IMG/VR virus record: IMGVR_UViG_3300017917_001123
Location: 124,001 to 188,000 of that record
DNA length: 64,000 nucleotides
Direction: 5' to 3' (one strand)
This document shows, one piece after another, positions 1,223 to 54,134 of the stretch. Position 1 is the stretch's first letter; every line of letters starts with the position of its first letter. Below the pieces are notes generated by a model that was not told where the DNA came from, ran no database searches, and saw nothing but the letters and a program-made list of their open reading frames with translations. The translations under genes and the position numbers were made by a program.

Positions 1223-1458
1223 TAAACAAGTACAAAGAACTTCACGAAAAACTAGTTGAAAAGTTTGTCGAATATCACAACGTTCATACTGCGTGGGTTC
1301 TTAGATTCTCGCAGGAGAAAACCATTACCCTGCGTCGAGTCTTAAGCGAGCTTCGCGTAATTGAAACTGAGTTACGAGCAGTAGCAAAAGAGATACAGCG
1401 TGAAGAAACAAAACGCAAACGTCAAAAATGGAATAGAGAAAAAGGAGACTCAGAATGA
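1219..1458 (+). CDS. Hypothetical helical protein, 79 aa; possible diverged paralogue of the downstream Hc1-like protein
   Basis: ATGA overlaps with both neighbouring genes; amphipathic helical pattern with a basic C-terminus. Confidence 0.7.
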   Translation: MINKYKELHEKLVEKFVEYHNVHTAWVLRFSQEKTITLRRVLSELRVIETELRAVAKEIQREETKRKRQKWNREKGDSE

Positions 1459-1649
1459 GCGCAACCATTGAAGCAATCAAACAAGCACTTTCCGCATGGG
1501 AAGCCGAGGATACTAAATTTGAAAAAGGCAACAATGCCGCAGGTACTCGTGCTCGTAAGGCATTAGCAGAAGTTAGCAAACTAATCAAGCAACGTCGAAA
1601 CGAAATCACAGAAACTAAGAATGCCCGCAAGGAAGCTAAAGCAGGGTAA
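1455..1649 (+). CDS. Small basic histone H1-like (Hc1-family-like) protein, 64 aa
   Basis: KGNNAAGTRARKAL closely resembles the GNKAAGTRARK core I recall for Hc1-family proteins; SD GGAG upstream. Confidence 0.7.
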   Translation: MSATIEAIKQALSAWEAEDTKFEKGNNAAGTRARKALAEVSKLIKQRRNEITETKNARKEAKAG

Positions 1650-2074
1650 TGACTTGGTTCTATCAAGGAACCGTTGTTAATGAGCTACCTGAAGATTGTG
1701 TTGGATTTGTCTACATTATTACGAACACAATCTCAGGTCGCAAATACATCGGAAAGAAATTAGCAAAGTTTTCAAAGACAACTTATAAAGTAGTCAAGCT
1801 AAAGAACGGTACAAAGAAGAAGAAAAAAATTCGTAGTAAAGTAGACAGTGACTGGCAAGAATATTACGGCTCATCCCCAAACCTCACAGAAGACATACAG
1901 AAACTAGGCAAAGAACACTTTCACAGAGAAATTTTACACTACTGCACATCAAAAGCACAAACATCATATCTCGAAGCCAAAGAACAATTTGAACGCAAAG
2001 TTTTAGAAACAGAAGATTACTATAACGGACACATACAAGTCCGTGTACATGGCTCACACATCCTAAAAAAATAA
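1649..2074 (+). CDS. Stand-alone GIY-YIG nuclease-family protein, 141 aa
   Basis: GFVYIITN...RKYIGKK motif, downstream YLEAKE (Glu) and YYNG (Asn); TAATG coupling with the upstream gene. Confidence 0.85.
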   Translation: MTWFYQGTVVNELPEDCVGFVYIITNTISGRKYIGKKLAKFSKTTYKVVKLKNGTKKKKKIRSKVDSDWQEYYGSSPNLTEDIQKLGKEHFHREILHYCTSKAQTSYLEAKEQFERKVLETEDYYNGHIQVRVHGSHILKK

Positions 2075-2542
2075 GGCACAGCAACAGTATAGGCTCGCAC
2101 CGGCTAACATCGGGTGCCTAGCGACAACCCACGTTTAAGGTGGGGGACGGAAGACTCTGCGCTGTACAGAGCACTCAGCAACTATCCTTAACCGGACGAC
2201 GATCGCAAATGCCGCGGTTTTGCTGTTTGAATAGAGTGAACATGAGCTAAAATGATGTGGAAACTAACAATAACCACACCTTATACTACTATGTTAGCGT
2301 ATAGCAGTATAAGCGCCGTTGTGATAAGACGGGGATGGAGGTACCGGACAACCGCCTCTGCTAAAGACCCTAACGCTAAGTGACTTGCCGTACTCGGATA
2401 ATGTCCTTTTCTTAGCCCTTAACGGGCTAAGTGTGACCATTAGTATCTGGATAATAGTTAAAACACTTCGTGTTAGTATCAAGTTAAAGAATAGTGCTTC
2501 TGAGCGTTAGCGAAAGAAGCAAACGAGCTTTAGCTCGTTTTT
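2075..2542 (+). ncRNA. Putative large structured non-coding RNA (~470 nt), family unassigned
   Basis: No credible ORF. At least 9 stem-loops, e.g. CCCAC/GTGGG 2128-2144, CTCTG/CAGAG 2155-2171, CTTATACT/AGTATAAG 2280-2312, CTTAGCCC/GGGCTAAG 2411-2431, GCTTC/GAAGC 2496-2520. Ends in a terminator-like hairpin. Strand inferred from the upstream operon and T-tract. Confidence 0.6.
2521..2542 (+). terminator. Intrinsic terminator
   Basis: AAACGAGC-TTTA-GCTCGTTT followed by TT. Confidence 0.7.
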
Positions 2543-2545
2543 CAA

Positions 2546-2553
2546 TATAAATA
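2546..2553 (+). promoter_or_regulatory. T4-type late promoter TATAAATA
   Basis: Exact T4 gp55 consensus 31 nt upstream of the ATG at 2585. Confidence 0.8.
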
Positions 2554-2584
2554 AAAACATTAACTCCACATAAGGATAAGTGTT

Positions 2585-3244
2585 ATGCGTATTCAAGATT
2601 TATTAGTAGAAACAAGTTTAAGCGAAACTCAATTAGATGAACTTAATGTTGCTCAAGGCATTGGGAAATTCGCGAGAGGCGCAGGAAAAGCCGTAGGTGG
2701 AGTTCAAGGGGCATGGAGCGGTGCTAAACAAGCATTTGGACAAGCACGTCAAACAACAGCTCAAAACGTACAACAAGCAGTATCGGGTCAGGCCGCTCCG
2801 CAACAAGCACCGGCACAACAGGCTCCTGCTCAAACACAACCAGGACAACCTGCCGCTCAAGTTGCTCCTGCTCAACAAGCACCAGTGGAACCTGCTCAAC
2901 AAGCGGCACCAGCAGATACTACTGCGGTTAATCCAGGTGTTCCAACTAGCGACGAACAAACACCACAGGCTAACCAAACTACAACAAATCCGGCGGCTGC
3001 TGGATCAAGAATTGGTGCTCCTGCTGGTAAACAAGCAGTTGATAACGCAATTAAGACTGTAAGTGCTGTCCGTACAGATCGCAGACAGGGTGTTATTGAT
3101 TATGCTCAACAGAAGCTAGATCAAGCAGAACAAGAATTGCTAGCACTTCGTAAGAACGCAGGTATTAAACAGCAACCACAGCTTCAAGTTCAGCAAGGTG
3201 GTAAAGCTCCTGCTCAAGCTCCGCAACAGCAAGCGGCAGTTTAA
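2585..3244 (+). CDS. Gln/Ala/Pro-rich low-complexity late protein, possibly an internal head protein, 219 aa
   Basis: Late promoter and SD AAGGA; APAQQ repeats; N-terminus MRIQDLLVE...LSE...LDE resembles Glu-specific prohead protease substrates. Confidence 0.7.
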   Translation: MRIQDLLVETSLSETQLDELNVAQGIGKFARGAGKAVGGVQGAWSGAKQAFGQARQTTAQNVQQAVSGQAAPQQAPAQQAPAQTQPGQPAAQVAPAQQAPVEPAQQAAPADTTAVNPGVPTSDEQTPQANQTTTNPAAAGSRIGAPAGKQAVDNAIKTVSAVRTDRRQGVIDYAQQKLDQAEQELLALRKNAGIKQQPQLQVQQGGKAPAQAPQQQAAV

Positions 3245-53341: not shown

Positions 53342-54134
53342 AGAAAATTTAACAGTTTCAACACCAAAAGCAGATAGCGTAGACGCAGAATTCTTAAATC
53401 GATACGGTTTAGATAGTTTCGAAAAAGATATTATGTCCTACGCTATTCATAGCAATATGGGCATGACTGCCTATCAATGTGCTAACTTTGTAGCCCGCGG
53501 CCAACTAACACCGTGGAGACAAGTTCGTCAAGCATACATGGAACTTGAAGTACGTTACCATGCTTATCAAGAAATCAAAACAAGTCTACGCAAAGCAGAA
53601 CTAATTCGTAAGAAGTGGCTTCGCGATCAGGCCGAAGCAACAGATGAAATTGCTAAAGAAATGCTTCAAGTTGATATTGATAAAAACGATTACGATATTA
53701 CAATTTACAAACGTAAAATGCTTCAAGCAGAACGCGAAATTAATGCGTTCCTAGATGTTGTTAAGCATTTTGCTAAATCTGAAGAAGATCTTAAATTCTA
53801 CGCAGACGACAATCCAGAAGAAGAACGTAAGTATTGGATTGCTCGTATGGCAAAACAAGCGGCAATTGATGTAATTTCCTATGGCCGTGTAGGATCTGGT
53901 AATATGGACAGCATCGCAATGATGCCAGAAGAAGATCAAGTCGAAGCTCTAGCAATGGCCATGAAATATTCCGGTATGGTCCAAGCAGGCATACATAATA
54001 TATCACTGGGCGTACAAGGCCAGATTGACCAAATGTTAGAGAGCAAAGATGAAAAACTACCAGACATCTGCGAAGACGCAAAAAATATTCAGCTTACCGA
54101 TCAACCCAAAATTAACGGAACAACAATACTATAA
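53325..54134 (+). CDS. Coiled-coil hypothetical protein of the fibre-associated cassette, 269 aa
   Basis: QLTPWRQVRQAYMELE and YWIARMAKQAAIDVISYGRVGSGNMDSI blocks; helical composition. Confidence 0.75.
   Translation: MDSNSKENLTVSTPKADSVDAEFLNRYGLDSFEKDIMSYAIHSNMGMTAYQCANFVARGQLTPWRQVRQAYMELEVRYHAYQEIKTSLRKAELIRKKWLRDQAEATDEIAKEMLQVDIDKNDYDITIYKRKMLQAEREINAFLDVVKHFAKSEEDLKFYADDNPEEERKYWIARMAKQAAIDVISYGRVGSGNMDSIAMMPEEDQVEALAMAMKYSGMVQAGIHNISLGVQGQIDQMLESKDEKLPDICEDAKNIQLTDQPKINGTTIL

What the first reader, a model, noticed from the sequence alone, without database searches (positions are those of the whole stretch)
1649..2542. Minimal GIY-YIG nuclease directly followed by a ~470-nt ornate structured RNA
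Seen: the largest non-coding stretch in the window starts at the nuclease stop codon, has at least 9 hairpins and ends in a terminator. Candidate long-range pairings include CTAACGCT 2370-2377 with AGCGTTAG 2503-2510, GGACA 2346-2350 with TGTCC 2402-2406, and CAGCAA 2176-2181 with TTGCTG 2220-2225. The nuclease has only a catalytic domain plus a very basic loop (KKKKKIRSK) and no obvious DNA-recognition domain. The upstream genes are all translationally coupled, so the RNA is probably co-transcribed. Known: compact nucleases with adjacent structured RNAs (IscB/TnpB with omega RNA) are RNA-guided, and phages carry large orphan RNAs such as GOLLD and ROOL. Inference: either a novel nuclease-RNA ribonucleoprotein or an independent large ncRNA.
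Basis: partly seen in the sequence, partly recalled or inferred. Interest (0 to 1): 0.82.

Follow-up and report, generated by a model that had tools for sequence, protein, structure and literature searches.

The report
Known orphan phage RNA beside nuclease
The 470-base gap after the small nuclease gene holds a real, large, intricately folded RNA, but it belongs to a family catalogued in 2010 (Polynucleobacter-1, function unknown), and RNA and nuclease each occur widely without the other, so a guide-RNA partnership is unlikely.

Summary
Window 2075-2584 is the largest non-coding gap. It encodes a + strand structured RNA of about 450 nt (about 2085-2545).

Bases 2092-2228 match Rfam RF01718, Polynucleobacter-1 RNA, at 89 bits against a threshold of 37. 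The remaining 300 nt have no Rfam model but are equally conserved and covary in more than 85 related phage contigs. They include a pseudoknot (2294-2300 with 2373-2379).

The upstream gene is an I-TevI-like GIY-YIG catalytic domain (PF19835) with intact catalytic residues and no DNA-binding domain. Weinberg et al. (2010) already noted that this RNA lies downstream of this gene family (PSSM2_218).

The pairing is strong only in one clade of freshwater T4-like phages: 113 of 118 RNA-first loci and about 61 of 72 protein-first loci. Elsewhere the two separate:
- The protein family matches in 515 phage records; none of the four loci tested has the RNA.
- The RNA sits in Polynucleobacter, Limnohabitans and related chromosomes with its own promoter-like region, next to a divergent DUF6641 gene and often a small tyrosine recombinase. 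No GIY-YIG is present there.
- No guide-like segment was found.

Best reading: an autonomous ncRNA of unknown function, carried at the tail of an early or middle operon. The guide-RNA idea is not excluded but is unlikely.

The parts
1649..2074 (+). 141-aa stand-alone GIY-YIG nuclease (SegE-type catalytic domain, T4-GC 213 / PSSM2_218 family). A long basic beta-hairpin insert (residues about 40-66) carries KKKKKIRSK. There is no DNA-binding domain.
   Evidence: Pfam PF19835, E 3e-33. PHROG 447. 38% identity to PSSM2_218, which is itself PF19835. GFVY, YIG, E94 and N126 are invariant and R62 is conserved in at least 90% of homologues. The AF2 model has pLDDT 84, and its best PDB fold match is the I-TevI catalytic domain 1LN0 (probability 0.98).
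2085..2228 (+). 5' domain of the RNA, equal to Rfam Polynucleobacter-1 (RF01718). It has three hairpins and then a junction closed by 2172-81/2220-29 that holds two more hairpins.
   Evidence: cmscan gives 89.1 bits against a gathering score of 37, covering model positions 1-141 at 2092-2228. Helices carry compensatory changes.
2229..2520 (+). 3' domain of the RNA, not covered by the Rfam model. It includes hairpin 2257-77, the long hairpin 2280-2313, a multi-branch region with the near-invariant GGUACCGGACAACCGCC, hairpin 2411-31, a variable region 2454-2500, and the conserved UGAGCGnnAGCGAAA.
   Evidence: Conserved in 87 phage sequences. 93.6% of cells are canonical against a shuffle maximum of 82.7%. 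The same core is present in phage RNAs with a different 5' module. The bacterial homologues end with the same 3' motif.
2294..2379 (+). Pseudoknot: the loop of hairpin 2280-2313 (2294-2300) pairs with 2373-2379.
   Evidence: 95% canonical, with 6 of 7 pairs changed on both sides. Weinberg's alignment also annotates a 'tail' pseudoknot.
2521..2545 (+). Terminal hairpin followed by TTTTT. It is the likely 3' end or terminator of the RNA and of the operon.
   Evidence: Sequence and terminator scan. All 7 pairs covary.
2546..2553 (+). TATAAATA, matching the T4-type late promoter consensus. It marks the start of the next, late transcription unit (gene 2585-3244) and is the boundary of the RNA.
   Evidence: Sequence. 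The same motif follows the hairpin in several homologues. The promoter assignment rests on knowledge of T4 late promoters.

Best explanation
Window about 2085-2545 (+) is a full-length phage copy of the Polynucleobacter-1 RNA. This is an autonomous structured non-coding RNA of about 450 nt. It has a 5' domain (the part Rfam models), a 3' core with a pseudoknot, and a terminal hairpin.

In this phage it abuts the stop codon of the last ORF of an early or middle operon (gp46-like, small ORF, Hc1-like, GIY-YIG). It is therefore most likely made by read-through transcription and then trimmed or left as a stable 3' end. This step is inferred.

The RNA acts in trans and does not serve as a guide for the GIY-YIG enzyme. 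The neighbourhood reflects gene order conserved within one clade of freshwater T4-like phages.

Full-length homologues with their own promoter-like region sit in chromosomal islands of freshwater Burkholderiales, next to a divergent DUF6641 gene. The most likely role is therefore a protein-binding or scaffold RNA in phage-host or mobile-element interplay, for example a phage copy of the island RNA that engages or titrates the island's partner protein. This role is inferred and untested.

The GIY-YIG protein is a separate stand-alone nuclease. Its family is widespread in T4-like phages.
For: Identity: RF01718 at 89.1 bits against 37.

Real RNA on the + strand: covariation, the G.U over A.C excess and the pseudoknot. 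No conserved ORF lies in the region.

Independence from the nuclease:
- 515 phage records match the protein family, and none of the four loci tested has the RNA.
- About 10 of 72 close homologues lack it.
- Bacterial copies (RF01718 confirmed at 79-98 bits in 14 of 16 loci tested, out of 42 pattern matches) have no GIY-YIG.
- About 14 phages carry unrelated accessory ORFs between the two, and each ORF ends right at the RNA start.
- One phage (L118) has a PD-(D/E)XK nuclease there instead.

Autonomy: the bacterial copies are conserved from a promoter-like region to a terminal hairpin, about 480 nt.

Host link: DUF6641 is divergent and adjacent in 35 of 37 bacterial loci. A profile of the bacterial RNA hits B-type phage RNAs over nearly full length (E 2e-32).

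Prior record: the same RNA-gene adjacency was noted in 2010 (PMC2864571).
Against: - The transcript, its ends and its timing are all inferred.
- Within the clade the nuclease-RNA adjacency is very tight: the RNA starts 10-50 nt after the stop codon in about 99 of 113 loci. The surrounding genes vary, which could mean a functional pair.
- In each context the RNA lies near a DNA enzyme that has only a catalytic domain: GIY-YIG, a PD-(D/E)XK nuclease, or a recombinase of 188-200 aa.
- No partner protein for the RNA was identified in the phage. DUF6641 is absent from the window and from all phage loci.
- DUF6641 has no known fold or function.
Confidence: 0.6

Rival explanations
1. The RNA and the GIY-YIG protein form a ribonucleoprotein. 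The catalytic-domain-only nuclease uses the RNA for target recognition or regulation. In a broader form, the RNA is a shared cofactor for minimal DNA enzymes.
For: - The adjacency is tight and clade-wide.
- The nuclease has no DNA-binding domain but has a basic beta-hairpin.
- In L118 a different small nuclease occupies the same position.
- In bacteria a recombinase of 188-200 aa, essentially a catalytic domain alone, often follows the RNA.
Against: - The protein family is common without the RNA and the RNA occurs without the protein.
- Unrelated genes are inserted between them in about 12% of loci.
- The variable parts of the RNA are hairpins or linkers of variable length, not a fixed-length unpaired guide.
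- The recombinase is absent from at least 6 bacterial loci that have enough flanking sequence.
Confidence: 0.1
2. The GIY-YIG gene is a free-standing homing endonuclease. Its cleavage site lies in the highly conserved RNA gene next door, so the linkage reflects homing, as with T4 Seg enzymes that cut near their own insertion site.
For: - The protein has the Seg-type GIY-YIG domain.
- The RNA gene offers invariant stretches of 10-17 nt.
- Some close relatives have the RNA without the nuclease (L118) or the nuclease without the RNA.
- Seg biology is drawn from general knowledge of T4.
Against: - The protein has no DNA-binding domain, which Seg enzymes and I-TevI need.
- The gene is nearly fixed in the clade (113 of 118) and is a conserved gene of cyanomyoviruses at other genome positions. 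That pattern is not the patchy one expected of a mobile gene.
Confidence: 0.1
3. The conserved structure acts at the DNA level or in cis: a replication origin, a single-strand DNA element, or a 3' UTR or attenuator that controls neighbouring genes.
For: - It lies at the boundary between an early or middle operon and late genes.
- Both strands of 2229-2545 fold better than shuffles.
- A weak language-model lead links DUF6641 to MobI, an oriT accessory protein (score 0.48).
Against: - The 4:1 excess of G.U over A.C, the covarying pseudoknot and the roughly 19 helices fit a folded single strand of the + sense.
- In bacteria it has its own promoter-like region and terminal hairpin.
- Downstream genes differ in identity and orientation among phages, so no common cis target exists.
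- T4-like phages have no known use for an oriT.
Confidence: 0.07

Closest known systems
Polynucleobacter-1 RNA motif (Rfam RF01718; Weinberg et al. 2010, Genome Biol 11:R31, PMC2864571)
   Same: Window 2092-2228 matches the whole model at 89 bits. It sits downstream of a PSSM2_218-like gene, exactly as described in 2010. The source environment is fresh water and Burkholderiales.
   Different: The Rfam model covers only about 140 nt, whereas the conserved RNA here is about 450 nt with a 3' core and a pseudoknot. The 2010 paper found it in no sequenced phage; here it lies in a T4-like phage genome and in more than 120 IMG/VR contigs. The upstream gene is now identified as a GIY-YIG nuclease.
GOLLD and ROOL (large ornate RNAs of phages and prophages, function unknown)
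   Same: Both are large, highly structured RNAs with many conserved unpaired bases. Both are carried by phages and by bacterial mobile regions, and neither has a known function.
   Different: The window gives no Rfam match to either family. This RNA is smaller, has a different architecture, and occurs in different hosts.
IscB/TnpB omega-RNA systems
   Same: A compact nuclease gene is followed directly by a structured RNA.
   Different: The nuclease fold differs (GIY-YIG, not RuvC/HNH). There is no guide segment and no transposon ends. Protein and RNA families occur independently of each other.
I-TevI and T4 Seg GIY-YIG homing endonucleases
   Same: The catalytic fold and catalytic residues are shared.
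   Different: This protein has no linker or DNA-binding domain. It carries an inserted basic beta-hairpin, is not within an intron, and is nearly fixed within its clade.

Membership tests
Rfam RF01718 Polynucleobacter-1 RNA | Covariance-model score above the curated gathering score, over the full model | tested here: met
   89.1 bits against 37, model positions 1-141 of 141, window 2092-2228 +.
Rfam RF01718 Polynucleobacter-1 RNA | Model helices maintained by compensatory changes in homologues | tested here: met
   In the 5' domain, 94.7% of cells are canonical against a shuffle maximum of 83.9%, and 21 of 36 pairs show double changes.
Rfam RF01718 Polynucleobacter-1 RNA | Typical context: downstream of a GOS11034 / PSSM2_218-like gene (Weinberg 2010) | tested here: met
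   PSSM2_218 is PF19835 and 38% identical to the window protein. 113 of 118 RNA loci have the gene upstream.
RNA-guided nuclease system (IscB/TnpB omega-RNA type) | Obligate co-occurrence of the nuclease family and the RNA family | tested here: not met
   Protein without RNA. RNA without protein.
RNA-guided nuclease system (IscB/TnpB omega-RNA type) | A hypervariable, unpaired guide segment of constant length at one end of a conserved scaffold | tested here: not met
   The variable stretches (2234-43, 2264-73, 2404-10, 2454-2500) are loops, hairpins or linkers of variable length. This rests on inspection, not a formal test.
RNA-guided nuclease system (IscB/TnpB omega-RNA type) | Physical binding of the RNA by the nuclease, and RNA-dependent cleavage | not testable with these tools
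   This needs pull-down and cleavage assays.
Free-standing GIY-YIG homing endonuclease (Seg type) | GIY-YIG catalytic domain with catalytic Tyr, Arg, Glu and Asn | tested here: met
   PF19835. GFVY, YIG, E94 and N126 are invariant and R62 is conserved in at least 90% of homologues. The fold matches I-TevI 1LN0.
Free-standing GIY-YIG homing endonuclease (Seg type) | A separate C-terminal DNA-binding domain | tested here: not met
   The Pfam domain covers residues 3-129 of 141. The model shows only the catalytic fold and a beta-hairpin insert.
Free-standing GIY-YIG homing endonuclease (Seg type) | Patchy presence among otherwise syntenic relatives (mobility) | tested here: inconclusive
   The gene is present in 113 of 118 RNA loci and absent in L118. 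Homologues lie at other positions in cyanophages.
Group I intron carrying a GIY-YIG ORF | Intron ribozyme core interrupting a host gene, with the ORF in a peripheral loop | tested here: not met
   No intron family matches, even at E up to 10. The ORF start overlaps the stop of the upstream gene, and there are no flanking exons.
GOLLD / ROOL large phage RNAs | Match to the family covariance models | tested here: not met
   No match in the whole window or in 1900-2700 at E up to 10.

The most novel reading that the evidence does not exclude
The Polynucleobacter-1 RNA is a shared cofactor that gives target recognition or control to minimal DNA enzymes that have only a catalytic domain. These would be the GIY-YIG nuclease in T4-like phages, a PD-(D/E)XK nuclease in at least one phage, and a tyrosine recombinase of 188-200 aa in host islands. 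That would be a new class of RNA-directed DNA enzymes.
Probability: 0.07. Interest if true: 0.95.

Novelty: new member of a known kind. Interest (0 to 1): 0.5.

Why it matters
Large, intricately folded RNAs of unknown function are rare, and they have repeatedly turned out to be ribozymes or cores of new molecular machines. This window places one such orphan, Polynucleobacter-1, in a T4-like phage genome.

The work here adds four points:
- The RNA is about three times longer than its database model.
- Its 3' core is the constant part, joined to at least two alternative 5' modules.
- Full-length copies are shared between phages and chromosomal islands of their likely hosts, where the neighbour is a DUF6641 protein.
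- The conserved neighbour gene noted in 2010 is a GIY-YIG nuclease.

These points give concrete handles for experiments: two candidate partner proteins, defined RNA ends, and likely hosts. They also suggest a role in phage-host or mobile-element conflict. The headline idea of a new RNA-guided nuclease is not supported.

Tried and rejected
- tRNA or tmRNA: ARAGORN found none in the window. Only an 11.6-bit alpha_tmRNA hit appeared. Rejected.
- Group I intron, RNase P, GOLLD, ROOL, HEARO: no Rfam match at E up to 10.
- Hidden coding region: stop-free stretches vary from 37 to 109 aa and the variation is stem covariation, not codon-like.
- Close phage relatives in GenBank: blastn of 1400-2700 found only an Hc1-like gene match.
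- RNA near distant GIY-YIG homologues (Melnitz, V45v66, ACP17, BUCT-ZZ01): none.
- Invertible-segment idea for the bacterial locus: the inverted repeats found are not consistent between loci. Dropped.
- DUF6641 function: no literature, no PADLOC hit, no PDB fold match, and only its own clusters plus a weak MobI lead in the Atlas.
- Whether DUF6641 always accompanies the RNA: four distant DUF6641 loci showed no RNA by Rfam or nhmmer. The sequences are short and the sample is small, so this is inconclusive.
- A sequence-only profile of the phage 3' domain does not reach the bacterial copies. The homology of A-type and bacterial 3' parts rests on shared motifs, on their order, and on B-type phage intermediates.
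- Slips: searches had wrong coordinates.

Full report
**What is at the site**

The window is from a T4-like phage with 41% G+C. It encodes a gp46-like Rad50/SbcC protein, a T4 baseplate protein and very large structural ORFs. No close relative exists among GenBank phages.

Four + strand ORFs overlap start to stop: 14-1222 (gp46-like), 1219-1458, 1455-1649 (Hc1 histone-like) and 1649-2074. After the stop at 2074 comes the largest non-coding gap of the window, 510 nt. The gap ends with hairpin 2521-2540 plus TTTTT, followed by a T4 late-promoter-like TATAAATA at 2546-2553, ahead of gene 2585-3244.

**The RNA is real and is already catalogued**

Rfam places 2092-2228 (+) in RF01718, Polynucleobacter-1 RNA, at 89.1 bits (gathering score 37) over the whole model. 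Nothing else in the window or in 1900-2700 matches any Rfam family. ARAGORN finds no tRNA or tmRNA.

The family comes from Weinberg et al. 2010. Their supplement says the motif occurs in Polynucleobacter and in environmental sequences. It says the 3' half is not always detected. It also says that most copies lie downstream of genes of family GOS11034 'with possible homology to PSSM2_218 of cyanophage P-SSM2', and that none was found in a sequenced phage. Their alignment has a 'tail' sub-family with a pseudoknot.

I fetched PSSM2_218. It is a 145-aa PF19835 GIY-YIG protein, 38% identical to the window protein. So the nuclease-RNA adjacency is the one reported in 2010. The gene simply had not been named as a nuclease.

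**Extent and structure**

Two of these are chance hits.

Alignment of 87 distinct sequences shows conservation across 2090-2520, not only across the Rfam part. Near-invariant blocks lie at 2144-53, 2224-33, 2314-60, 2394-2403, 2424-33 and 2504-13.

RNAalifold on the gap-stripped alignment gives about 19 helices. A scan of all column pairs adds a pseudoknot between hairpin loop 2294-2300 and 2373-2379.

On 73 rows below 90% identity, the figures are as follows:
- 93.5% of cells in 105 pairs are canonical, against 80.5% on average and 81.2% at most in 300 column shuffles.
- Sliding the 3' partners by 1-2 columns gives 34-39%.
- 62 pairs have changes on both sides, against a shuffle mean of 48 and a maximum of 55.
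- G.U cells outnumber A.C cells 767 to 185, so the fold belongs to the + strand.
- The 3' domain alone behaves the same way (93.6% against a maximum of 82.7%).

No ORF is conserved in the region.

**The nuclease**

The protein is a SegE-type GIY-YIG domain (PF19835, residues 3-129). GFVY, YIG, E94 and N126 are invariant and R62 is conserved in at least 90% of homologues. The AF2 model (pLDDT 84) matches the I-TevI catalytic domain best (1LN0, probability 0.98). A long beta-hairpin insert carries the lysine run. There is no DNA-binding domain.

**Linkage tested both ways**

Starting from the RNA: 113 of 118 true loci have the GIY-YIG gene upstream on the same strand. In about 99 of them the RNA starts 10-50 nt after the stop codon. 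The distances to gp46 and to the baseplate gene vary by kilobases.

In about 14 loci, unrelated accessory ORFs lie between nuclease and RNA. Two are short (72-83 aa) and the rest are 214-334 aa. Each ends right at the RNA start. In L118 there is no GIY-YIG within 8.5 kb, and the gene before the RNA is a phage PD-(D/E)XK endonuclease.

Starting from the protein: 72 loci chosen by protein similarity alone (62-82% identity) had enough downstream sequence. Of these, 59 have the 3' domain and a few more have only the 5' domain. About 10, mostly the most distant, have no RNA.

Beyond this clade the protein matches in 515 phage records, mainly cyanomyoviruses, often mislabelled 'NAD synthetase'. Four tested loci (Melnitz, V45v66, ACP17, BUCT-ZZ01) have no RNA.

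**The RNA outside phages**

A pattern from the other sequence type in Weinberg's alignment (B-type) matched 42 stretches in bacterial genomes. Most are Polynucleobacter, Limnohabitans and other Comamonadaceae and Burkholderiaceae, including complete chromosomes, and some genomes have two copies. Rfam confirmed RF01718 at 79-98 bits in 14 of 16 tested. None has a GIY-YIG gene nearby.

The bacterial context is as follows:
- A DUF6641 gene (PF20346, about 145 aa) lies divergently just upstream in 35 of 37 loci.
- A Phage_integrase-family gene of 188-195 aa follows on the same strand in about 20 loci. It is absent from at least 6 loci that have enough sequence.
- Other neighbours vary.

The bacterial RNA is conserved from a promoter-like region to a terminal hairpin, about 480 nt. 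It ends with the same UGAGCGnnAGCGAAA-plus-hairpin motif as the phage RNA.

The same B-type pattern also occurs in four T4-like phage contigs with gp46, Hc1, GIY-YIG and RNA in the same order. A profile of the bacterial RNA hits these over nearly full length (E 2e-32). They bridge the bacterial and phage forms.

A third phage form (C-type) keeps the 3' core but has an unrelated 5' region of about 200 nt. The 3' domain is therefore the constant core, and Rfam's 5' domain is one of at least two alternative modules.

**What I could not learn**

DUF6641 has no literature, no defence-system match and no PDB fold match. It is a large family, with 2152 clusters at 50% identity. Four distant members showed no recognisable RNA nearby, which is inconclusive.

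**Interpretation**

Shown:
- A structured + strand RNA of about 450 nt that belongs to a known family.
- Clade-specific adjacency to a stand-alone GIY-YIG gene.
- Independent occurrence of both partners elsewhere.
- Full-length homologues in likely host chromosomes beside DUF6641.

Inferred:
- Read-through transcription from the operon, with the hairpin as the 3' end.
- Action in trans.
- A role in phage-host or mobile-element interplay, possibly through the protein partner of the island copy.

The RNP or guide reading stays open at low probability. The adjacency is tight, and in each context the RNA lies near a DNA enzyme that has only a catalytic domain. However, it fails the co-occurrence test and the guide-segment test.

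**Verdict**

The finding is real, but it is a new and fuller instance of a known orphan RNA, not a new nuclease-RNA system. It is of moderate interest.

Noticed in passing
L126-L167 (e.g. L165:2290-4296, L161:4666-7209): In freshwater Burkholderiales chromosomes the RNA forms a conserved divergent pair with a DUF6641 gene (35 of 37 loci). It is often followed by a tyrosine recombinase of 188-195 aa, essentially a catalytic domain alone. A distant DUF6641 locus (L253) also has a 200-aa integrase about 1 kb away on the opposite strand.
   Followed up: partly
L118:7962-8474 (+): One related phage has no GIY-YIG gene. A PF24608 phage PD-(D/E)XK endonuclease lies directly before the RNA, preceded by a radical SAM gene.
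   Followed up: partly
L178, L188, L200, L204, L208, L218, L224 (bases about 1924-2400 of each): These phage RNAs share the 3' core (..GGGGGUACCGGUCAACCGCC..) but have an unrelated 5' region of about 200 nt that Rfam does not recognise. It is an alternative 5' module.
   Followed up: partly
L010, L015, L028, L037, L041, L046, L049, L057, L080, L084, L120: The junction between the GIY-YIG gene and the RNA is a hot spot for insertion of unrelated accessory genes of 214-334 aa, all on the same strand.
   Followed up: partly
window 1455-1649 (+): The phage encodes a 64-aa homologue of the chlamydial histone H1-like protein Hc1 (PF07432, E 2.5e-15). Several related phages and Synechococcus phage S-SRM01 have it too.
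   Followed up: no
window 16648-48114 (+): Three very large ORFs of 3591, 2296 and 4437 aa lie almost back to back. They were not examined.
   Followed up: no
window 53342-53790: This is the second-largest gap between long ORFs (449 nt). It has no Rfam match and was not examined further.
   Followed up: no
window 2585-3244 (+): A 219-aa protein rich in Gln, Ala and Pro, with no Pfam or PHROG match. It follows a T4 late-promoter-like TATAAATA and is present in only a few related phages (L007, L044, L066).
   Followed up: no
GenBank phage records: Many homologues of this GIY-YIG protein are annotated 'NAD synthetase' (PHROG 447 carries that name). The Pfam domain and the predicted fold contradict this label.
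   Followed up: partly
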